Of a stretch of 64,000 nucleotides of DNA, positions 244 to 57,270 are shown piece by piece. The stretch's first letter is position 1. Each line of letters starts with the position of its first letter. The translations under genes and the position numbers were made by a program. Origin of the DNA: Octopus sinensis (taxonomy: Eukaryota); assembly GCF_006345805.1 (NCBI RefSeq), contig NC_043002.1:97526001-97590000 (forward strand). The letters are read 5' to 3'. A model generated the notes under the pieces. That model saw only the letters and a program-made list of their open reading frames with translations. It made no database searches and was not told the origin of the DNA.

Positions 244-1940
244 GCATAGCAAAGTGGAAAAAGTATGGTGTAGCGGAGGACAGAACTGACAGCATATGGA
301 AGAAGTTTAGGGACAATAGAAATCAGGAGAGGCTTCTTCCAAAGAGACTGCCTGTCCCCCACTGATCTTTGTACTGCGAATGATATCACTACCACTGATT
401 CTGAGGAAAGCAAATGCTGAGTATGTATTCAAAAGCCGCCAACAAAAAGTCAACCATTTGTTATTCATGGATGACCTCAAACTTTATGGTAAAGATGAAT
501 CCCAAGTCAGTTCCCTCGTTGATGCGGTGTATAACTTCAGTGCTGATATCGGAATGGAACTCGGACTGAGAAAGTGTGGTGTATTAGTCTTGAAGAGAGG
601 AAAAAATCAAATGTATGGACGGGCTAACGATACCGTCGGGGGAGGTTATGAAGCAGATAGAAGAGACGGGCTATAAGTACTTGAGGGTTTGGGAAATGGA
701 TAAATTAATGGAGAAAAAAATGACAGAAAAATTTAAGGTGGAGTACTTGCGCAGACTGAGACTGATGCTTAAGTCGAAATTAAACGGACGGAATAAGATT
801 AAAGCTATCAACACCTGGGCAGTTTCACTCCTCAGATATGGAGCAGGGGTAATCGCATGGATAGTAAACGAACTAAGCAGCTTAGAGAGAAAGACAAGGA
901 AGTTGCTGACTAGATATAGGTTACTCCACCAAAAAGTGACACAGACAGATTGTATGTACCAAAAAAAAAAGAGGGGGAAGAGGACTGATTGGATGCGAAC
1001 ACAGCATTAGAGCAGAAGAAAACAACATAGCATGGTACGTAAAAAATACCACCGAACCGCTATTATTGAAAGTAAAAAGGTCAGGCTTGTGTAAGTTGGA
1101 AGATTGCAAAGATAAAGTACTGTACAAGAAATTGAAAACGAATGAAACTGAAAGTAGGTGGATAAAGAAAAGAATGCATGGACAATTTCATTATGTTGAT
1201 GATAAGAGAGACAGAGAAAAAAGATGGCTGTGGATGACTAAAAGTGGTTTAAAACAGGAAACGGGGGCCCTAATCTGTGCTGCCCAAGCGCAATCATTAA
1301 GGACATCAAATACAGAATAGACAACACATCAGAAAGTGATAAGTGCAGAATTTGTGGACAAAATGGTGAAACCGTATCACATACTACCAGCCAATGTACG
1401 CCACTAGCCCTGAAAGAATATAAGAGACGTCACGTCAATATAGCAAGACTTGTCCATTGGACACTTTGCAACAAGTATGGACTTGACAGAACAAAAAAGT
1501 GGTAAGAACATAAACCCGAAGACATCATCAAAAATGATAATGCAAAGATCCTGTGGGATTTTATGATTCAGTGCGACCATGAGAGTGAGAATAGGAAGCC
1601 AGGCATAGTGCTAATTGAGAAAGAAAACAAACTATGCTGGATCATAGATATAGCATGCCCAGCTGACAACAAGTTATGTGATAAGAAATGTTGGTAGATA
1701 TAACAGGTTCGCTTGGAAGGTAAGGCAGTTGTGGTCGCTGAAAAGGTGGCAGTATTACTAATAATTGTCGGAGCCCTGGGAACAGTGGGTAAAAATCTTG
1801 AGAAGTACATAGAACAAATAGGGGCTGCAATGAAAACAGCACTGCTTGGACCTGCTCGAATACTAAGAGGTTTTACCTTAATGCACTGGTAGTGAACAGC
1901 TGACACCGTAGTACAACACCAGCGTTAGAAGCTGTGCAAA
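243..1940 (+). pseudogene. 5'-truncated, frameshifted R4/Dong-like non-LTR retrotransposon (RT, CCHC knuckle, restriction-like endonuclease)
   Basis: RT motifs GFFQRDCLSPLIF and NHLLFMDDLKLY, then NKIKAINTWAVSLLRYGAG. KCRICGQNGETVSH at about 1340-1385. KILWDFMIQCDHESENRKPGIVLIEK at about 1545-1625, then IIVGALG and KTALLG. Multiple stops and frameshifts. Confidence 0.9.
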
Positions 1941-4659: not shown

Positions 4660-4863
4660 GTTACTTACTCTTTTACTCTTTTACTTGTTTCAGTCATTTG
4701 ACTGCGGCCATGCTGGAGCACCGCCTTTAAGTCGAGCAACTCGACCCCGGGACTTATTCTTTGTAAGCCCAGTACTTATTCTATCGGTCTCTTTTGCCGA
4801 ACCGCTAAGTTACGGAGACATAAACACACCAGCATCGGTTGTCAAGCAATGCTAGGGGGACAA

Positions 4864-4901
<38 letters not shown>

Positions 4902-5086
4902 ATATATATATACATATATACGACAGGCTTCTTTCAGTTTCCGTCTACCAAATCCACTCACAAGGCATTGGTCGGTCCGGGGCTATAGCAGAAGACACTT
5001 GCCCAAGATGCCATGCAGTGGGACTGAACCCGGAACCATGTGGTTGGTTAGCAAGCTACTTACCACACAGCCACTCCTGCGCCTAT
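4660..5086 (-). mobile_element. SINE family A, full length (ataggcgcaggagtggctgtgtggtaag... internal TA/TG microsatellite ...gagtaaaagagtaa tail)
   Basis: Near-identical to copies at 15266, 19754, 26542, 39841 and 45710. Confidence 0.9.
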
Positions 5087-11090: not shown

Positions 11091-12115
11091 TATGAGGTTA
11101 TCCTAGAAGTTCTGTCCGAATTTTGAATAAAGAAAACAAGTGATCAAATGTTATATTTAATTGAAATTTAATTATCAATGTACTTTCCCTGATTATCTAT
11201 GACTTACTTCCATCTATTTACAAGCTTTTTAATCCCATCAATGTAAAACTCTTTTGGTTGCAAAGCGAAGAACTCTGAAATATCAGGTTCGACCTCCTCC
11301 TGGCTTGCGAAAGTTGTGTCCCCCTAATAATTCTGTAAACTATGAAATAAATGGTATCCTGAAGGAGTAAGGTCGGGAGAATAAGTTGGATGAAGAATTT
11401 TTTTCCAAACAGACCTCTTCGATCTTCTGTGATGTGATCTTTGCAGTGTGGGGTCGCGCATTGTCCTGCTGAAACATCACACGTTTCGACTCACTAAAGC
11501 GGGTATTTTTTCCTTCAACGCTTGGTTCAAACGCTCTAATTGCTGACAGTAGACTTGAGCATTGATTGTTGCATTAAGTGGTAACAATATAAAGTGAATC
11601 ACTCCTTTGCAATCGCACCAGATATAGAGAAGACTTTTTCCCATGAAGTTCCTTTTTCGGTTGTGGTTGAGCTTTTTCCCTTTTACCAAGCCACTGTTTA
11701 CAACGTTTAACATTTCGATAGAAGATCCATTTTTCGTCACCAGTCACAAGTCTATCCAAAAAGGGTGAAATGAGTTCGAGAGCATGGAGAGAAGAACAGA
11801 TGTCAACTCGGGATTTGCGGTTGCTTGCGGACAATTCATGAGGTACCCATTTTCCAAGTTTAGGAATCTTTCCAAGTTGTTGACGATGACGATGAACTGA
11901 TGTATGGTTTGAACTAAGTTTTATTGCCAATTCTTCAACTGACAATGCAGGATTTTCTTCAAGTAATTCCTCAAGAAGCTTATCATCAAACTCAACTGGA
12001 TGTCCTGTTCGATCTTCATCTTCAAGGCTGAAATATCCACTTCTGAATTTTGCAAACCATCTTCTGACAGTTCTTTCATTCAAACATTCTTTCTCATAAA
12101 CTGAGTATATGTTTA
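11091..12115 (-). mobile_element. Degenerate mariner transposon, 5'-truncated
   Basis: NERTVRRWFAKFRSG...GKWVPHELS...LDRLVTGDEKWIFY (first catalytic D). Frameshifted C-terminus ends at about 11168; TIR-like tatgaggttatcc at 11091. Confidence 0.93.
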
Positions 12116-12317
12116 CAGTAATCCTTCGCTATATCGCGGTTCATCTATCGCGGTTTATTATTTAAGCTGACGTCGATTTCTCCATGGTATTGTTTTGCAC
12201 TTATGATAAAATGAATATATACAAATTATAAAAATAATTTTAAAAAATATACGGTACTGTTTCTACCTCGCGGTATGGAGGTGAAAATTTACAGCCACCA
12301 TAGTTGAGGGATTACTA
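12116..12317. mobile_element. Tigger/pogo-like MITE
   Basis: cagtaatccttcg ... gagggattacta inverted ends flanked by TA; same TIR as 28784-29311. Confidence 0.75.
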
Positions 12318-15265: not shown

Positions 15266-15432
15266 ATAGGCGTAGGAGTGGCTGTGTGGTAAGTAGCTTG
15301 CTTACGAACCACATGGTTTCAGGTTCAGTCCCACTGCGTGGCACCTTGGGCAAGTGTCCTCTACTATAACCTCGGGCCGACCAAAGCCTTGTGAGTGAAT
15401 TTGGTAGACGGAAACTGAAAGAAGCCTGTCGA

Positions 15433-17810: not shown

Positions 17811-17821
17811 AACTTCATTAA

Positions 17822-18046
17822 TTACATTATTTACATTTGACGGATATTTTTCCTCATCTTGTTTGTGGCTAACACATTTCGGCTGATATACCCTCCAGCC
17901 TTCATCAGGTGTCTTGGGAAAATTTCGAACCTGGGTTCTCATTCTTAAGGTATTTTTCGATGTGTTATTATTATTATTATTTTATTATTATTATATTATT
18001 ATTATATTATTATTATTTATTATTATTATTATTATTATTATCACCA

Positions 18047-18097
<51 letters not shown>

Positions 18098-18160
18098 TAT
18101 TATTTTATTATTATTATTATTATTATTATATTATTATCATCATTATTATTATTATCACCA

Positions 18161-18195
<35 letters not shown>

Positions 18196-18957
18196 TATTA
18201 TATTATTATATTATTATTATCATTGCTTTTGCACAGCTTCTAACGCTGGAGATGTATTACAGTGTCAGCTGTTCACTACCAGTGAACTAAGGTAACACCT
18301 CTTATTTTTCGAGCACCTTCCAGAATATTCGAGTGGTTCCAAGCAGTGCTGTTTTCTGCAAGTGCTCCACCCTTATTACGGCCCCTATTTGTTCCACGTA
18401 CTTCTCGAGATTTTTGCTCACTGTTCCCAGTGCTCCGACAATTTTCATCGACCACAATTCCTTGACTTCTCAAGCTAACCTGCCATATCTCTAGACTTTT
18501 CTTTCTTCTTTATCGCATATCTTGTTGTTAGCTGGGCATGCTATATTTATGACCCAGTATAGTTTGTTTTCTTCCTCAATTAAGACTATGTCAGGCTTCC
18601 TATTCTCTATCTCATGGTCGCACTGCATCATAAAATCTCATAGGATCTTTGCATTTCCATTTTCGACGATGCCTACAGGTTTGTGGTCGTACTTTTTTAT
18701 ATTCATTCAGGTCACCGCCTGGAATCGAAATCGGAATCTTGAGGTTAGTTGCCAATGCTCTTAACCACTATGCCTCATGCCCGAAAAAATACCTTAGGAA
18801 TGAGAACCCAGGTTCGAAATTTTCCCAAAACACATGATGAAGGCTGGAGGGTATATCAGCCGAAACATTGTGTTAACAACAAACAAGATGAGGACAAATA
18901 TCCGTCAAATGTAAATAATGTACATAATTCCTCATCTCTTAAATATAAAACTGTATT
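17822..18957. mobile_element. Composite foldback element: inverted hammerhead-bearing arms around a tRNA-like head and (TAA)n, interrupted by a LINE fragment
   Basis: The left arm 17822-17962 is the reverse complement of the right arm at about 18785-18957. tRNA-like head on the minus strand at about 18705-18780. Same family as 33434-33818. Confidence 0.75.
18229..18700 (-). pseudogene. R4/Dong-like LINE 3' fragment (RLE domain and 3' UTR)
   Basis: Minus strand gives NAKIL*DFMMQCDHEIENRKPDIVLIEEENKL; the 3' UTR matches 1870-1940; (ATA)n tail. Confidence 0.85.
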
Positions 18958-19753
18958 ATAGTAGTTGAGCTTGTTAAGTCTTGCCAAGCAATGGGATACT
19001 TTATATCATTCGGCGGCGAGCTGGCAGAATCGTTAGCACGCCGGCCGAAATGCTTAGCAGTATAATCGACTTAATCCGTTTGTCTGTCCTCCCTTGTGGG
19101 TAGTAAAGAAATAGGTATTTCGTCTGCTGCTACGTTCTGAGTTCAAATTCCGCCGAGCTCGACTTTGCCTTTCATCCTTTCGGGGTCGAGTAAATAAGTA
19201 CCAGTTACGCACTGGGGTCGATATAATCAACTTAATCCGTTTGTCTGTCCTTGTTTGTCCCCTCTGTGTTTCGCCCCTTGTGGGTTGTAAAGAAATTTAT
19301 ATCATTAAAGGTTCAGTCGCTTTGACGTTTTTCCAGAAGAGAAGGTTGCAACAAACGACAAAGAGGATTAGCAATTATACCTGGATATTTCTGTGACGGA
19401 AAAGCGTTAGTGGGCCAACTGGAACCCCAGTGTGTTTTATGATTACTGCTGGCCTCTTTAAAGAGACACCTCTCGGGCAAACTATAAAATAAAATGAAAT
19501 CAATCTACAGTTTGATCTATAATTATGTCGTTTTAATAGTGTATTAATATTGGGTTGGTGCATAATTATTGCGGCTTTTTTCAACAAATTATATTCAACA
19601 AAAACAATAGCAACATGTAACACAAATATCTTTAAATGATTATTCCGGAGCATATTTGCTTGGCAGACGGTCAGACCGTCATTTAAAGATGCTTTTGTTA
19701 AATATTGTTATTGCTTCTGTTGAATAAAATTTGTTGAGAAAAAAAAAGCCACA

Positions 19754-19933
19754 ATAGGCGCAGGAGTGGCTGTGTGGTAAGTAGCTTGCTAGCCAACCAC
19801 ATGGTTGCGGGTTCAGTCCCACTGCGTGGCATCTTGGGCAAGTGTCTTCTGCTATAGCCCCGGGCCGACCAATGCCTTGTGAGTGGATTTGGTAGACGGA
19901 AACTGAAAGAAGCCTGTCGTATATATGTATATA

Positions 19934-20905: not shown

Positions 20906-21134
20906 ATTTCTTTACTACCCACAAGGGGCTAAACATAGAGGGGACAAACAAGGACAGACAAACGGATTAAGTCGATTACATCGACCCCCAGTGCGTAACT
21001 GGTACTTAATTTATCGACCCCGAAAGGATGAAAGGCAAAGTCAACCTCGGCGGAATTTGAACTCAGAATGTAACGGCAGACGAAATACGGCTACGCATTT
21101 CGCCCGGCATGCTAACGATTCTGCCAGCTCGCCG
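20906..21134 (-). mobile_element. SINE family C
   Basis: Reverse complement of the family C consensus. Confidence 0.85.
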
Positions 21135-26541: not shown

Positions 26542-26945
26542 ATAGGCGCAGGAGTGGCTGTGTGGTAAGTAGCTTGCTTACCAGCCACATGGTTCCGGGT
26601 TCAGTCTCAGTGCGTGACACCTTGGGCAAGTGTCTTCTACTATAGCCTCCGCCGACCAAAGTTTTGTGAGTGGATTTGGTAGACGGAAACTGAAAGAAGC
26701 CCGTCGTATATATGTATATATGTATGTGTGTGTGTCTGTGTTTGTCCCCCCCCAACATCGCCTGATAACCGATGCTGGTGTGCTTACGTCCCTGTAACTT
26801 AGAGGTTCGGCAAAAGAGACCGATAGAATAAGAACTAGGCTTATAAAGAATATGTACTGGGGTCGATTTGCTCTACTAAAGGCAGTGCTCCAGCATGGCC
26901 ATAGTCACATGACTGAAACAAGTAAAAGAGTAAATGAGAACAAGA
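26542..26945 (+). mobile_element. SINE family A nested inside a minus-strand family C SINE
   Basis: The host sequence cgccgctaagc|atttcgcccggcg is split, with taagcat duplicated on both sides. Confidence 0.8.
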
Positions 26946-33433: not shown

Positions 33434-33585
33434 TCTTGGGGAAATTTCGAACCTAGGTTCTTATTCCTAAGGTATTGCGTAGTGGTTAAGAGCGCGGGCA
33501 ACTAACCCCAAGATTCCGAGTTCGATTCCAGGCAGTGACCTGAATAATAATAATAATGATAATCATAATAATAATAATAATAATA

Positions 33586-33616
<31 letters not shown>

Positions 33617-33818
33617 CATTGAAAAATACCTTAGAAATGATAACCCAGGTTCGAAATTTCCCCCAAGACACCTGAAGAAGGCTGGAGGGTATATCAGCCG
33701 AAACGTTGTGTTAACAACAAACAAGATGTGGACAAATATCCGTCGAATGTAAATAATGTAAATAATGTAAATAATGTAAATAATGTACATAATTCCTCAC
33801 CTCTTAAATATAGAACTA
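33434..33818 (+). mobile_element. Composite element: inverted repeat, tRNA-like head, (AAT/GAT)n, inverted repeat, hammerhead, tail
   Basis: IR 33434-33476 pairs with 33625-33668; head 33477-33545 with tagtggttaag and gagttcgattcc boxes. Confidence 0.8.
33667..33712 (+). ncRNA. Minimal type-I hammerhead ribozyme
   Basis: GACAC-CUGAAGA-A-GGCUG-(10 nt)-CAGCC-GAAA-CG-UU-GUGUU; stem III is the palindrome AACGUU. Confidence 0.7.
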
Positions 33819-39840: not shown

Positions 39841-40253
39841 ATAGGCGCAGGAGTTGCTGTGTGGTAAGTAGCTTGCTAACCAACCACATGGTTCCGGGTT
39901 CAGTCCCACTGCGTGGCATCTTGGGCTAGTGTCTTCTGCTATAGCCCCGGTCGACCAATGCCTTGTGAGTGGATTTGGTAGACGGAAACTGAAAGAAGCC
40001 TATCGTGTATATGTATATATATATTTATGTGTGTGTATGCGTTTGTGTGTCTGTGTTTGTCTCCCAAGCATTGCTTGACAGCCGATGCTGGTGTATTTAT
40101 GTCCCCGTCACTTAGCGGTTCGGCAAAAGAGACCGATAGAATAAGTACTGGGCTTACAAAGAATAAGTCCCGGGGTCGATTTGCTCGACTAAAGGCGGTG
40201 CTCCAGGATGGCCGCAGTCAAATGACAGAAACAAGTAAAAGAGTAAAAGAGTA
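39841..40253 (+). mobile_element. SINE family A
   Basis: Full-length match. Confidence 0.9.
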
Positions 40254-45709: not shown

Positions 45710-46130
45710 ATAGGCGCGGGAGTGGGTGTGTGGTAAGTAGCTTGTCTACCAACCACATGATTCCGGGTTCAGTCCCACTGCGTGGCACCTTGGGCAAGTG
45801 TCTTCTACTATAGCCTCGGGCCGACCAAAGCCTTGTGAGTGGATTTGGTAGACGGAAACTGAAAGAAGCCCGTCGTATATATGTATATATATATATATGC
45901 GTGTGTGTGTTTGTGTGTCTGTATTTGTCCCCCTAGCATTGCTTGACAACCGATGCTGGTGTGTTTATGTCCCCGTTACTTAGCGATTCGGCAAAAGAGA
46001 CCGATAAAATAAGTACTGGGCTTACAAAAGAATAAGTCCCGGGGTCGATTTGCTCGATTAAAGGCGGTGCTCCAGCATGGCCGCAGTCAAATGACTGAAA
46101 CAAGTAAAAAGAGTAAAAAAAAAAGAATAA
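45710..46130 (+). mobile_element. SINE family A; its head is also duplicated at 45487-45537
   Basis: Full-length match; part of the 45399-45760 tandem duplication. Confidence 0.9.
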
Positions 46131-47454: not shown

Positions 47455-47714
47455 CTGTCCCTATATTTTTATCTTTCCTCTTTTACTTATTTCAGTCAGT
47501 AGATTGCGGCCGTGCTGTGGCGCTGCTTCGAAGAATATTTTAATTCAATGAATAGACCAGTGTACTTATTTTTCTTCAATCTGGTACTTATTCTATCGGT
47601 CTCTTCTGCAGAATGCTAAGTGACGAGGACGTAAACACACCAACACCGGTTGTCAAACTGCGGCGGAGGACAGACACACACACACACCACACACGCATGC
47701 ACGCACACACGCAC

Positions 47715-47779
<65 letters not shown>

Positions 47780-47920
47780 TAACGGCAAGCTTCATTCAGT
47801 TTCCGTCAATCAAATCTCTTTGGATGATCCGAAGTGCTTTGGATGATCCGAAGTGCTTACCCAAAGTACTACGCAGTGGGACTGAACGCAGAACCATGTG
47901 GTTGGGAAGCAAACTTATTA

Positions 47921-47951
<31 letters not shown>

Positions 47952-47990
47952 ATATATTATATATATATATAATATATATATATATATATA

Positions 47991-48334
47991 ATTTACAAGA
48001 GGCAAAAGAAAAATTCTAATGCCAAATATGCCGAAACAAAAATTGTCAATAACCATTATAATTTATGTGTCTCGAAACAAACCGATAGAAATTTCTAAAA
48101 AAATTCGTTATTACCGTATTGGTCCAATTTCGGAGTTAATTCTTAAGAATTTTCTCCTCTTCAGCGGCAAATACGCGAGATATAAGTGAAATACTTACTC
48201 ATACCCATGGAAAAAGCTTTTTTTAGAAATTTCTATCGGTTTGTTTCGAGACACATAAATTATAATGGTTATTGACAATTTTTGTTTCGGCATATTTGGC
48301 ATTAGAATTTTTCTTTTGCCCTTATCTTGTAAAT
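47991..48334. mobile_element. Foldback element with 103-bp perfect inverted repeats enclosing a hammerhead ribozyme
   Basis: 48001-48103 is the exact reverse complement of 48218-48320; 114-bp spacer. Confidence 0.9.
48111..48170 (-). ncRNA. Canonical type-I hammerhead ribozyme
   Basis: UUGCCG-CUGAAGA-GGAG-(18 nt)-CUCC-GAAA-UUGG-A-CCAA-UA-CGGUAA. Confidence 0.85.
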
Positions 48335-48419
48335 TATTTATGAGTTTAACCTTTAAAGGTATTTTTTGATATGCTGGCCATTGATGAAATTTTTTTCCCG
48401 AAAAGAATTTTATCCTACA

Positions 48420-48424
48420 TTAAT

Positions 48425-48455
<31 letters not shown>

Positions 48456-48708
48456 ATATATATATATATATTATATATACATTATATATATATATAATAT
48501 ATATATATATATAATTATATATACATTATATATATATATATATTAATATATATATAATATATTATATATACATTATATATATAATATAATATATATTATA
48601 TATATTATATATACATTATATATATATATATATATATTATATATACATTATATATATATATATATATTATATATACATTATATATATATATATATATTAT
48701 ATATACAT

Positions 48709-48743
<35 letters not shown>

Positions 48744-48779
48744 CATTATATATATTATATATATAGTATATATATTATA

Positions 48780-48854
<75 letters not shown>

Positions 48855-49176: not shown

Positions 49177-49209
<33 letters not shown>

Positions 49210-49210
49210 A

Positions 49211-49243
<33 letters not shown>

Positions 49244-52049: not shown

Positions 52050-52505
52050 CTTTAAGTCCTTGGATTGCCGCCATGCTGGAGCACCGCCTTCAAGGGCTTA
52101 GAAGAACGAATCGACACCAGTACATATATTTTAAGTTGCCGATATGCAATCAAACCAACGCTAGTGGCCAGGTGGTAGTGTAGGGACAAACACAAGCACA
52201 AAGGCATGCACACACACACACATACACATACGCGCGCGCGCACTTACACATACACACACATATCACGCGCGCGCGCACAGATATGCAAACACATACAAAC
52301 GCAAACAAATATACAAACACATACATACACAAACACACACACACATATGTATATATTTGTGTGTGTGTGTGTGTGTGTGTGTACGTGTGTGTACGTACCA
52401 TCTGGGGCTACAGTGGAAAATATTTGCACAAGGCACCGCCCATTGGGACTGAACCCGAGACCATGTGGTAGTGAATCGAGCTTCTTTACCACACAACCAT
52501 GCCTC
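52050..52505 (-). mobile_element. Degenerate SINE family A
   Basis: Recognisable head and tail around a CA-rich centre. Confidence 0.7.
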
Positions 52506-54111
52506 TGTGTGGGTGTGTGTGTGTGTATCTGAAAAAATGTCGGCAGAAAAAGAATTAATTTAAACTTACTAGGTGTATTATTGGTCGATGAGAATAATGA
52601 TGATGAGCCAGAAACTTAACTTGGATTTGAGATTAAGATGAAGCTGGGAGCTAAAGATAAAGTCTGTCTAGACAGAAAAGATACAAATATTTCCAGGATA
52701 ATCGTGTTTGGTAATCGCCTGCGATCATAGAGAACAAAACAGAATCAACAAGGAAACACCAAGCTCTCAACGAATTAAATCCGTGTGCATGTTAGAAAAA
52801 ACAGTTTTCTTCAGCTACCCGTGATGATAAAGCCGACGTTCGGATTAGACTCTGTGTTATGGTTTAAGTGGATGAGAGACGGATACTAACTAGATAACCC
52901 CGAACCCCCACCCTGTTTCTGTCAGTAATATTTTCAGAATATCAAAAGAAGTCCAGCATAATGATGAATTTATATTTATAAAATTTAAAATTAACAATCC
53001 AGTTTGTCATTTCTTCTTCATTTACACTGAAATTAAGAGTCTAAGAAAGCTTCCATATTTTAAAGAGCTTATTTTATGTGTGCGTGTGTGTGTATACTTA
53101 TGTACGTTTGTATGTATGTATGTATGCATGTATATATTGCTCAATACAGGCACATGCATGGCTGAGTGATAAGAAACCTGCTTCTCAGCTACATGGTTCC
53201 ACGTTCAGTCCCACTGCGTGACACCTTGGGCGACCAAATCCTTGCGAATGGATTTTGTAGTTAGAAACTGAAATGGAAGGACGGTTCGATGGAAATTGGA
53301 AGCACTCCGTCGGTTACGACGATGAGGGTTCCGGTTGATCCGAATCAACGGAACAGCCTGCTCGTGAAATTAACGTGTAAGTGGCTGAGCACTCCACAGA
53401 CACGTGTACCCTTAACGTAGTTCTCGGGGATATTCAGCGTGACACAGAGAGTGACAAGGCCGGCCCTTTGAAATACAGGTACAACAGAAACAGGAAGTAA
53501 GAGTGAGAGAAAGTTGTGGTGAAAGAGTACAGCAGGGACCACCACCATCCCTGCCGGAGCCTCGTCGAACTTTAGGTGTTTTCGCTCAATAAACACTCAC
53601 AACGCCCGGTCTGGGAATCGAAACCGCGATCCTACGACCGCGAGTCCGCTGCCCTAACCACTGGGCCATTGCGCCTCCTCGATGGAAATTAATATACACA
53701 TAATTTACCATCTTGTGAAAAGTGGTGGGAAGCGCACATTTATTAATTATGTGGGAGTTATGGGGTTGTGGGAAATGCCATAAACGTTAGAGCCTGCGAT
53801 TTTTGTGATATTCTATGTTTTCCGTCGAAATAGTTAGGTCTAATTCATCCTGTGCCGCATTTGTATTTTACGTTTCCCCTGTATATTACTTCAACGGGTT
53901 TCTAAACATTAAGACAGATACTATGTGGAGAGAGGGACAAAGATAAAAAGGGGGAAATGTGTGCTCGGGGTTAAAGAGAGAAATTTGCAAATTCAATTGC
54001 GATACGAAATTTGCAACTTAATTTTAATTTTCCTCGGTTTTCCTCATGATTTTGTAATTGTATACTTATTGAAGCAAATCGATATTAGTAAAATCTATAT
54101 ATTTCAATAAC

Positions 54112-56863: not shown

Positions 56864-57270
56864 GTGCAGGCATAGCTGTGTGATAAGAAACTCGCTTCCC
56901 AAGCACATGGTTCCAGGTTCAGTCCCACTGTGTAGCATCTTTGGCATGTGTTTTTGTACTATAGCCTCAGCCTGACAAAAGCCTTGTGAGTGAATTTGGT
57001 AGACGGAGACTGAAAGAAGCCTCTACATAAATATATATTTGTGTGTATGTGTGTGTGTGTCTTTGTCTCTGTTTTTTGGAATCACCACCACTTAACAACC
57101 AATGTTGTGGGTGTTTGCGTCCCCGTAACATAGCTGTTCGGCCTAAGAGACTGAGAGAATAAGCACCAGGTTTTAAAAAAATAAGCAGTGATGACGTTTC
57201 GTTCGTCCAAAATTCTTCAAAGTGGTTTCTCCAGCATGGCCGCAGTCTAATGACTGAAACAAATAAAAGC
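56864..57270 (+). mobile_element. Degenerate SINE family A
   Basis: Diverged but colinear with the consensus. Confidence 0.75.

What the first reader, a model, noticed from the sequence alone, without database searches (positions are those of the whole stretch)
47991..48334. Foldback element: 103-bp perfect inverted repeats enclosing a canonical hammerhead ribozyme
Seen: 48001-48103 and 48218-48320 are exact reverse complements. The 114-bp spacer holds, on the minus strand, UUGCCG-CUGAAGA-GGAG-(AAUUCU/AGAAUU hairpin)-CUCC-GAAA-UUGG-A-CCAA-UA-CGGUAA, with all core bases and three stems; the predicted cut is 48117/48116. It lies between (TA)n tracts. Known: Penelope-like elements carry minimal type-I hammerheads in pseudo-LTRs and generate inverted terminal copies; a 1-nt loop III implies dimeric cleavage. 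Inference: a very young hammerhead-bearing mini-element whose transcript would be a long rod-like dsRNA with a ribozyme in the loop, reminiscent of retrozymes. An annotation pipeline would probably call it a MITE and miss the ribozyme.
Basis: partly seen in the sequence, partly recalled or inferred. Interest (0 to 1): 0.88.

Follow-up and report, generated by a model that had tools for sequence, protein, structure and literature searches.

The report
Hammerhead ribozyme inside inverted retroelement remnant
A 350-bp hairpin-shaped stretch of animal DNA does carry a complete self-cleaving hammerhead RNA motif, but it is most likely ordinary head-to-head debris from a Penelope-like retrotransposon insertion, not a new kind of mobile element.

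Summary
Positions 48001-48103 and 48218-48320 are exact reverse complements. The arms continue outward to 47988 and 48337 across one 4-nt indel. The 114-nt spacer carries a complete type-I hammerhead on the minus strand (48170->48111, cut 48117/48116). It is the only such motif of its class in 64 kb, with a chance rate of about 0.0007 per window at the observed stem lengths. Rfam misses it, but Rfam also misses a second hammerhead family in this window that has homologous copies.

I read the structure as two 5'-truncated copies of one hammerhead-bearing retroelement 3' end (230 nt and 120 nt). They are joined head-to-head with 3' ends outward, and the left end abuts a (TA)n tract. Published work describes exactly this for Penelope-like elements: an inverted truncated partner, (TA)n or AT-rich targets, a hammerhead about 85-130 nt from the 3' end, and nicking and extension of both strands.

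A second, unrelated hammerhead family in the same window (33667-33712; 17871-17913; 18829-18874) shows the same head-to-head topology with 92%-identical arms.

No homologue of the 48-kb unit was found anywhere, so descent from a Penelope-like element is inferred, not shown. A heritable foldback mini-element or retrozyme-like family is not supported.

The parts
47988..48103 (-). Left arm. This is the 3' terminal 116 nt of the long (230-nt) minus-strand copy. The perfect part is 48001-48103. The outer 13 nt (47988-48000) also mirror the right arm. The outer end abuts (TA)n.
48104..48217 (-). Unique 114-nt spacer. It is the part of the long copy that extends 5' beyond the truncation point of the short copy. 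It has no internal symmetry. It holds the hammerhead and a second small hairpin upstream of it.
48111..48170 (-). Type-I hammerhead motif: helix I 6 bp, core CUGAAGA...GAAA, helix II 4 bp plus an extended hairpin, helix III AUUGG-A-CCAAU, and H17 = A. With the internal loop and 3-bp closing stem of helix I it spans 48106-48175.
48116..48117 (-). Predicted self-cleavage site, between A17 (48117) and C1.1 (48116). It lies 129 nt from the left-arm 3' end (133 nt counted with the right arm's extra CTTA).
48218..48337 (+). Right arm. This is the short (120-nt) 5'-truncated plus-strand copy of the same 3' end. It starts at a T7 run. The perfect part is 48218-48320. It has 4 extra bases (CTTA, 48321-48324) relative to the left arm. 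Its outer 13 nt are identical to the left arm's.
48338..48424 (.). 87 unique AT-rich bases between the right arm and the right (TA)n tract. They show no similarity to the element or to the rest of the window. They are either pre-existing sequence or a one-sided PLE-type 'tail' extension; this is unresolved.
47921..47987 (.). Left (TA)n tract, the presumed target. It follows a truncated copy of a dispersed SINE-like repeat (47474-47915).
48425..48854 (.). Right (TA)n-rich tract of about 430 bp.

Best explanation
The locus is a dead-on-arrival insertion made by Penelope-like-element (PLE) machinery. It consists of two 5'-truncated cDNA copies of the same hammerhead-bearing retroelement 3' end. 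That source could be a PLE pseudo-LTR/3' region or a PLE-dependent non-autonomous unit.

Inferred mechanism: the PLE endonuclease nicks both strands of an AT-rich or (TA)n target. Reverse transcription starts at the same internal RNA site on both strands. One cDNA reached 230 nt, passing through the ribozyme. The other stopped at 120 nt, at a U7/A7 run. The two 3' ends were joined head-to-head and each was filled in on the other. The result is two arms identical by construction, 3' ends facing outward, plus a 114-nt 'spacer' that is simply the extra length of the longer copy.

The hammerhead is inherited from the parent element, where it would process multimeric PLE or retrozyme transcripts. 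At this locus it has no demonstrated role.

Shown: the anatomy, the motif and the (TA)n context. Inferred: the PLE parentage, the two-strand priming and any catalytic activity.
For: 1. Anatomy: the arms are perfect, both end at the same outer 13-mer, and the spacer is asymmetric and unique. This is what two unequal copies of one defined 3' terminus predict.

2. The published description of PLE insertions fits: heavy 5' truncation, an inverted 5'-truncated copy forming inverted repeats, (TA)n preferred targets, the hammerhead near the 3' end, and an optional one-sided tail (PMC8557442). Single hammerheads are attributed to truncated PLEs, and opposite-strand pairs lie 100-700 bp apart (PMC4209133). 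Some PLE hammerhead variants, including those reported from shrimps, have a small palindromic helix III.

3. Biochemistry of a Poseidon PLE: the protein cleaves AT-rich DNA on both strands and extends both. The RT start site is the same on both strands and lies about 85-92 nt 3' of the hammerhead cut, plus a 30-40 nt optional tail (PMC11167929). Here the distance from cut to 3' end is 129-133 nt.

4. Co-location of rare features: the motif rate is 0.0007 per window. It sits in the spacer of the only perfect non-low-complexity inverted repeat. Only 3.5% of window positions lie within 15 bp of a (TA)n tract of 20 bp or more.

5. An independent in-window precedent exists. A second hammerhead family of PLE 'min-HHR' architecture gave 0 hits in controls. 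It has three homologous copies (alignment A1). Two of them form a head-to-head pair with 3' ends outward and 144-bp arms at 92% identity, and these two share at least 6 states against the third copy. Its cut-to-3'-end distance is 83-110 nt.

6. Rfam misses that second family too, so the Rfam negatives for the 48-kb motif carry little weight.
Against: - No homologue of the 230-nt unit was found. The window gave nothing. Protein-handle look-ups gave nothing. Viral, metagenome and prokaryote collections gave only chance matches. Descent from an RT-encoding PLE is therefore not demonstrated.
- The window has no PLE RT or GIY-YIG ORF.
- Helix sizes (I = 6, II = 4, no bulge before G10.1) match the 'canonical' type-I hammerheads of tandem retrozymes more than the minimal PLE variant.
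- The right end is 87 bp away from (TA)n, and no target-site duplication can be read in this AT-rich context.
- There is no microhomology at the 48217/48218 junction.
- Rfam hammerhead models do not score the motif.
Confidence: 0.62

Rival explanations
1. This is a heritable foldback mini-element (MITE-like, or a 'foldback retrozyme'). The inverted repeat plus loop ribozyme would be the transposing unit itself, propagated as a family with fixed arms.
For: The terminal inverted repeats are long and clean. In the second hammerhead family, two separate loci share the same junction between an inverted arm and the tRNA-like head (33476/33477 and about 18785/18773). So an inverted arm next to a hammerhead unit may sometimes be inherited in this genome.
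Against: There is no second copy in 64 kb or in any collection. The spacer is asymmetric and contiguous with one arm. The arms are identical, whereas family copies would normally differ. No target-site duplication is readable. PLE literature explains the structure without a new element class.
Confidence: 0.12
2. A simple 5'-truncated insertion of a hammerhead-bearing retroelement (47988-48217) later gained the 120-nt inverted arm through DNA repair. Fold-back priming or polymerase-theta-type templated insertion at a break near the (TA)n tract would do this, rather than PLE two-strand priming.
For: (TA)n tracts are fragile. Templated inverted insertions of about 100 bp are a known repair outcome (my own knowledge). 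The 87 unique bases to the right would then simply be original sequence.
Against: The inverted copy ends at exactly the same outer 13-mer as the unit's own terminus. A repair copy has no reason to respect that boundary. There is no microhomology at 48217/48218. The second family shows the same topology at another locus.
Confidence: 0.1
3. The hammerhead is a chance motif inside an unrelated palindrome, with no ribozyme ancestry.
For: About 20 motifs of this quality are expected by chance in a 2-Gb AT-rich genome. Rfam models do not score it. No homologues are available to show conservation.
Against: The rate is 0.0007 per 64-kb window, and the motif lies within a 114-nt spacer. Several features not required by the descriptor are present: the G10.1-C11.1 pair, the canonical 6-bp and 4-bp helices with internal loops where loops 1 and 2 sit in canonical type-I ribozymes, a closing stem on helix I, and a near-palindromic helix III. 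The inverted-copy and (TA)n contexts are both independently PLE-like.
Confidence: 0.07
4. The perfect inverted repeat is an assembly or chimeric-read artefact.
For: Published work notes that PLE tandem/inverted structures trouble assemblies (PMC8557442). 100% arm identity is what an artefact would give.
Against: The arms differ by a 4-nt indel and enclose a 114-nt unique spacer. The window has no Ns. Read-level palindrome artefacts normally lack a spacer and are much longer (my own knowledge).
Confidence: 0.04

Closest known systems
5'-truncated Penelope-like element insertions with an adjacent inverted 5'-truncated copy (Penelope/Poseidon, Neptune, Naiad; Evgen'ev & Arkhipova 2005; Craig et al. 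2021, PMC8557442)
   Same: Head-to-head copies with 3' ends outward, forming an inverted repeat. Heavy 5' truncation. A (TA)n or AT-rich target. A hammerhead about 100 nt from the 3' end. Possibly a one-sided extension.
   Different: No RT/GIY-YIG ORF and no demonstrated homology to a PLE. Both copies are extremely short (230 and 120 nt). The possible 'tail' would be 87 nt rather than 30-40 nt.
Opposite-strand pairs of PLE hammerheads 100-700 bp apart, and single dispersed motifs (Schistosoma and other metazoans; Cervera & de la Pena 2014, PMC4209133)
   Same: Dispersed, truncated, inverted arrangements of hammerhead-bearing PLE ends. Some PLE variants (reported from Drosophila, rotifers, shrimps and mosquitoes) have a small palindromic helix III.
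   Different: Only the longer copy here reaches the ribozyme, so there is one hammerhead rather than two. Helix I (6 bp) and helix II (4 bp, no bulge) are canonical rather than 'minimal'.
Metazoan non-LTR retrozymes (Cervera & de la Pena 2020, PMC7229834; Li et al. 2026 preprint, 10.64898/2026.07.22.740005)
   Same: A type-I hammerhead with canonical helix sizes, low GC (29%), a unit size in the 170-400 nt range, and presumed mobilisation by PLEs. Monomeric and dispersed copies are reported.
   Different: Retrozymes are tandem direct repeats with a hammerhead per unit, and they give imperfectly self-paired circular RNAs. Here there is a single hammerhead, no direct repeat, and a perfect inverted duplication generated at the DNA level.
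SINE-like elements with hammerheads (Schistosoma Sm-alpha type; from my own knowledge and citations in PMC4209133)
   Same: A non-autonomous retroelement carrying a type-I hammerhead. The second family in this window (tRNA-like head, then microsatellite, then hammerhead, then tail) resembles this class.
   Different: The 48-kb unit has no tRNA-like head in the retained 230 nt.
MITEs / foldback DNA transposons
   Same: A short non-coding unit with long terminal inverted repeats in AT-rich DNA.
   Different: No readable target-site duplication, no family copies found, and arms that are identical with an asymmetric spacer contiguous with one arm.

Membership tests
Hammerhead ribozyme, type I | Conserved core: C3 U4 G5 A6 N7 G8 A9, G12 A13 A14, the A15.1-U16.1 pair, and H17 before the cut | tested here: met
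   Minus strand 48164-48158 is CUGAAGA, 48131-48128 is GAAA, U16.1 is 48118 and A17 is 48117.
Hammerhead ribozyme, type I | Three helices around the core, helix I open-ended, and a G10.1-C11.1 closing pair | tested here: met
   Helix I is 6 bp (one G.U) plus an internal loop and a 3-bp closing stem. Helix II is GGAG/CUCC plus an extension. Helix III is 5 bp with a 1-nt loop, or 4 bp with a triloop. The active-type monomer fold is -15.2 kcal/mol against an MFE of -16.2.
Hammerhead ribozyme, type I | Score at or above the curated threshold of an Rfam hammerhead covariance model | tested here: not met
   No hammerhead family appears at the gathering threshold or at E<=10. As a control, a second hammerhead with three homologous copies is also missed, so the models are insensitive to these variants.
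Hammerhead ribozyme, type I | Conservation or covariation of the motif in homologous copies | tested here: inconclusive
   No homologue of the 48-kb unit was found in any accessible source.
Hammerhead ribozyme, type I | Site-specific self-cleavage | not testable with these tools
   This needs in vitro transcription with core-mutant controls.
Penelope-like element (autonomous) | An ORF with a telomerase-like RT, usually joined to a GIY-YIG endonuclease | tested here: not met
   There is no RT or GIY-YIG at the locus. The only RT in the window is a LINE-type remnant at 320-673. The locus is therefore not an autonomous PLE; at most it is a fragment or a dependent of one.
PLE-generated insertion (truncated fragment) | An inverted 5'-truncated copy adjoining the unit, with 3' ends outward, forming an inverted repeat | tested here: met
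   The 230-nt minus copy and the 120-nt plus copy share the same outer 13-mer.
PLE-generated insertion (truncated fragment) | An AT-rich or (TA)n microsatellite target | tested here: met
   The left end abuts (TA)n at 47921-47987. Only 3.5% of window positions are this close to a (TA)n tract. The right end is ambiguous because of the 87-nt unique segment.
PLE-generated insertion (truncated fragment) | A hammerhead located roughly 85-130 nt upstream of the insertion's 3' end (the RT start site) | tested here: met
   129-133 nt here, against 85-92 nt plus a 30-40 nt tail in Poseidon PAc. Family 2 in this window gives 83-110 nt.
PLE-generated insertion (truncated fragment) | Sequence homology of the fragment to the pLTR/3' end of an RT-encoding PLE in the same genome | not testable with these tools
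   The source genome is not searchable by nucleotide here, and no parent lies in the window.
Metazoan non-LTR retrozyme | Tandem direct repeats (150-450 bp) each carrying a type-I hammerhead | tested here: not met
   The locus has a single hammerhead and no direct repeat of the unit.
Metazoan non-LTR retrozyme | Low GC content and unit size of 170-400 nt | tested here: met
   GC is 29% and the retained unit is 230 nt, though truncated. This feature is not discriminating.
MITE / foldback DNA transposon | Terminal inverted repeats flanked by a target-site duplication | tested here: inconclusive
   The inverted repeats are present. The flanks (…TATAT | …| TTATG) do not allow a duplication to be called in TA-rich sequence.
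MITE / foldback DNA transposon | A multi-copy family with conserved ends | tested here: not met
   The window holds no other copy. Genome-wide status cannot be tested here.

The most novel reading that the evidence does not exclude
The inverted repeat plus loop ribozyme is a heritable, transcribed unit. It would be a family of PLE-mobilised 'foldback' hammerhead elements whose RNA is a perfect hairpin of about 100 bp with a self-cleaving ribozyme in the loop. The ribozyme would release or shape a hairpin RNA that feeds RNA interference against the parent PLE family, or that serves as a compact transposition template. The weak hint for this is that two loci of the second hammerhead family share the same junction between an inverted arm and the element's head.
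Probability: 0.08. Interest if true: 0.65.

Novelty: new member of a known kind. Interest (0 to 1): 0.3.

Why it matters
As found, the locus is a clean, very young example of the head-to-head products that PLE two-strand priming is thought to create. The arms are still identical, both outer termini are readable, and the ribozyme lies at a measurable distance from the RT start. Loci like this could be used genome-wide to map PLE RT start sites, truncation hot spots (here a U7 run) and target preference.

It also gives a practical caution. Rfam covariance models miss both hammerhead families in this window. Repeat annotators would likely label such structures as MITEs or miRNA-like hairpins; Rfam's best hit here was a plant miRNA family at E = 2.6e-9. 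The locus does not open a new question about ribozymes or mobile elements unless the foldback unit proves heritable.

Tried and rejected
- Rfam at gathering and at permissive thresholds gave no hammerhead hit. It returned only generic hairpin/miRNA matches caused by the long inverted repeat.
- Exact-protein look-ups of the small ORFs across the element and of neighbouring ORFs, meant to fetch the same locus or sister copies from public assemblies, found nothing on record.
- A homology search with the 56-aa arm-plus-ribozyme ORF returned no candidates.
- A strict ribozyme pattern in the viral, metagenome and prokaryote collections gave 0 hits.
- Relaxed patterns gave 65 + 7 + 1 hits. None is a three-stem hammerhead at the matched site, so they are chance matches.
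- The LINE RT fragment, used as a handle for same-species DNA, gave best hits of only 50-61% identity from anonymous ENA assemblies. 'Decapod crustacean' is only my guess from the microsatellite richness.
- I searched for the missing 3' part of the flanking SINE-like repeat beyond the element, to reconstruct an empty site. It was not found.
- The 87-nt right flank, tested as a diverged element copy, is not significant.
- Residual symmetry inside the spacer is not significant.
- Literature string searches for the ribozyme sequence and the supplements of the two key PLE papers gave nothing held.
- A PLE parent in the window is absent.

Full report
**Observation**

The inverted repeat is exactly as reported. 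Positions 48001-48103 and 48218-48320 are 103 nt each, 100% complementary, and 114 nt apart. Once four extra bases in the right arm (CTTA, 48321-48324) are skipped, 47988-48000 mirrors 48325-48337 perfectly. The arms are therefore 116 and 120 nt, and both end in the same 13-mer. The spacer itself has no palindromic character.

On the minus strand, 48170->48111 carries a complete type-I hammerhead:
- Core: CUGAAGA and GAAA, with A15.1-U16.1, H17 = A and G10.1-C11.1.
- Helix I: 6 bp, followed by a 2x2 internal loop and a 3-bp closing stem.
- Helix II: 4 bp, followed by an AA/AA internal loop and a 5-bp hairpin.
- Helix III: AUUGG-A-CCAAU.

The isolated 72-nt RNA folds with helices I and II in the MFE. 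A fully active-type monomer fold, with helix III as 4 bp plus a GAC triloop, costs only 1 kcal/mol more. The whole element folds into a perfect duplex of more than 100 bp with the ribozyme in the apical region.

**Is it more than chance?**

My descriptor finds one such motif in the window. In 1,429 simulated windows the rate was 0.031 per window for a loose motif and 0.0007 at the observed stem lengths. A gigabase genome would therefore contain a handful of chance motifs, so the motif alone does not settle the matter.

What does is co-location. The motif lies in the 114-nt spacer of the only 100%-identical, non-low-complexity inverted repeat in 64 kb; other nearby inverted pairs are 72-93% identical. 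The structure also abuts a (TA)n tract, which is true of only 3.5% of positions.

Rfam gives no hammerhead hit at any threshold. Rfam also fails on a second hammerhead in this window that has homologous copies, so this negative is weak.

**Context**

The window is eukaryotic:
- GC is 37%, and at least 7.7% of the sequence is microsatellite.
- A mariner transposase remnant lies at 11574-12128.
- A LINE RT remnant lies at 320-1317.
- A dispersed SINE-like repeat has at least 9 copies.

No PLE RT or GIY-YIG domain is present. The host species could not be identified. A decapod crustacean is only my guess.

**What it is**

On the minus strand the sequence reads as follows: 47 nt of upstream sequence, the hammerhead, and then 129 nt ending at ...CUUGUAAAUUAU, next to (TA)n. 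This is the 230-nt copy (48217->47988). The plus strand from 48218 repeats only the last 120 nt of that same sequence, ending at 48337. The locus is therefore two 5'-truncated copies of one 3' end, joined head-to-head with 3' ends outward. The 'spacer' is the length difference between them.

This matches the published description of Penelope-like element insertions:
- Craig et al. 2021 (PMC8557442) describe a high degree of 5' truncation, an inverted 5'-truncated copy adjacent to the unit that forms inverted repeats, (TA)n preferred targets, a hammerhead near the 3' end, and an optional one-sided tail.
- Cervera & de la Pena 2014 (PMC4209133) report that most PLE hammerheads occur singly, as remnants of truncated PLEs, or as opposite-strand pairs 100-700 bp apart. 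Some PLE variants, including those from shrimps, have a small palindromic helix III.
- The in vitro study of a Poseidon PLE (PMC11167929) supplies a mechanism. The protein cleaves AT-rich DNA on both strands and extends both. The same internal RT start site is used on both strands, about 85-92 nt downstream of the hammerhead cut, plus a 30-40 nt optional tail. Here the distance from cut to terminus is 129-133 nt.

I infer two-strand target-primed reverse transcription followed by end-to-end joining and fill-in. This makes the arms identical by construction. The shorter cDNA ends at a U7/A7 run. I saw no microhomology at the junction.

**An internal precedent**

A descriptor for the published 'minimal' PLE hammerhead found a second ribozyme at 33667-33712 on the plus strand: GACAC-CUGAAGA-A-GGCUGG[AGGGUAUA]UCAGCC-GAAA-CG-UU|GUGUU. 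It has a bulge before helix II, a 6-bp helix II and a palindromic 15.2/16.2. There were no hits in the reversed sequence or in 100 shuffles.

This ribozyme belongs to a repeat I call 'family 2', whose unit consists of:
- a tRNA-like head (33477-33545; not recognised by ARAGORN or Rfam);
- (AAT)n/(GAT)n microsatellites;
- a 44-nt segment;
- the hammerhead;
- an 83-110 nt tail.

Two more copies lie at 18828->17816 (minus strand, a full unit with a microsatellite expansion) and at 18785-18952 (plus strand, 5'-truncated). They are head-to-head with 3' ends outward. Their 144-bp arms are 92% identical and share at least six states against the 33-kb copy. This is the same topology as the 48-kb element, only older.

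Only the 33-kb copy keeps an intact core. The 17.8-kb copy has lost 3 nt at helix III/H17, and the 18.8-kb copy has C3->A. A further copy in a Logan assembly (L076) has G5->A and a broken helix II pair. The ribozymes therefore decay after insertion, as expected if they matter for the active parent and not at the insertion sites. Family 2 shares no sequence with the 48-kb element.

**What remains uncertain**

- No homologue of the 48-kb unit could be retrieved by any route (see the tried-and-rejected field). PLE parentage, conservation of the motif and the variability of the inverted partner are therefore inferred from anatomy and literature.
- The helix sizes (6 bp and 4 bp, no bulge) resemble the canonical type-I hammerheads of tandem non-LTR retrozymes (PMC7229834). 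A 2026 preprint derives those retrozymes from PLE pLTRs. The parent may thus be a PLE-dependent non-autonomous unit rather than a PLE proper. The tandem arrangement that defines retrozymes is absent here.
- The 87 unique bases at 48338-48424 are either original sequence or an unusually long one-sided tail.
- In family 2, the 33-kb copy carries a 43-nt inverted arm at the same junction with the head as the 18.8-kb locus. That could mean recurrent truncation at the microsatellite, or that an inverted arm can be inherited.

**Age**

Zero substitutions over 116 aligned positions bounds per-copy divergence below about 1.3% at 95% confidence. One 4-nt indel, flanked by CTT...CTT, has already occurred. 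The insertion is young, but not necessarily very young.

**Verdict**

The feature is real and was accurately observed. It is best explained as a new example of a known kind: PLE-type head-to-head insertion debris carrying a hammerhead. It is not a new class of element.

Noticed in passing
window 33434-33817 (hammerhead at 33667-33712, + strand): A second, unrelated hammerhead of the published PLE 'min-HHR' architecture, with an intact core. It lies in a SINE-like unit made of a tRNA-like head (33477-33545), (AAT)n/(GAT)n microsatellites, a 44-nt segment, the ribozyme and a tail. A 43-nt inverted copy of the pre-ribozyme segment sits directly 5' of the head (33434-33476). Rfam and ARAGORN miss both the ribozyme and the head.
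   Followed up: yes
window 17816-18952 (hammerheads at 17871-17913 on the minus strand and 18829-18874 on the plus strand): An inverted, head-to-head pair of the same second family, with 3' ends outward and 144-bp arms at 92% identity. Both ribozymes are inactivated: one by a 3-nt deletion at helix III/H17, the other by C3->A. A 655-bp microsatellite-rich expansion lies inside the full copy (18039-18694).
   Followed up: partly
L076 1-200 (Logan SRR11869385 contig, 1876 bp): A further copy of the second hammerhead family at 79-85% identity, with a decayed core (G5->A) and one broken helix II pair. The family therefore exists outside this window. The organism of that run is not known to me.
   Followed up: partly
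window 47474-47915, with copies near 4672-5057, 15295-15431, 19783-19920, 26571-26700, 39870-39999, 45749-45869, 52441-52486, 53179-53230 and 56894-56944: A dispersed SINE-like repeat (…GGGACTGAACCCGGAACCATGTGGTTGG…AGCTACTTACCACACAGCCACTCC…) with internal microsatellites. The copy left of the element breaks off at …GCAAACTTA, where (TA)n begins. Its last ~25 nt are not found downstream.
   Followed up: partly
window 47715-47779 and 49177-49243: (AGAT)16 and (TCTA)16 tracts, 97% complementary to each other, flank the whole region about 1.4 kb apart. Their centre (~48477) differs from the element's centre (48160), so they are not part of the same palindrome.
   Followed up: no
window 19115-19296 / 20906-21088, and 45897-46124 / 47467-47698: Other inverted pairs of 183 bp (92%) and 240 bp (72%), 1.5-2 kb apart. 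They are probably oppositely oriented dispersed repeats or the ends of DNA transposons.
   Followed up: no
window 11574-12128 (-): A mariner/Mos1-type transposase remnant, with weak HTH_48, HTH_32 and Transposase_1 hits.
   Followed up: no
window 320-1317 (+): A frameshifted LINE-type reverse-transcriptase remnant (RVT_1, FMDD motif). The closest public proteins are only 50-61% identical and come from anonymous ENA assemblies.
   Followed up: partly
window 48052-48269 (-): Rfam scores the inverted repeat as plant miRNA precursor families (MIR9563 at E = 2.6e-9, MIR2670 at E = 2e-6, both below gathering). These are generic long-hairpin matches that could mislead automated annotation.
   Followed up: no
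window 48138-48151 (-): The extension of helix II is itself a perfect 14-nt palindrome (AAUUCUUAAGAAUU).
   Followed up: partly
window 47818-47858: A perfect 19-bp tandem duplication (CTTTGGATGATCCGAAGTG x2.2) inside the flanking SINE-like copy.
   Followed up: no
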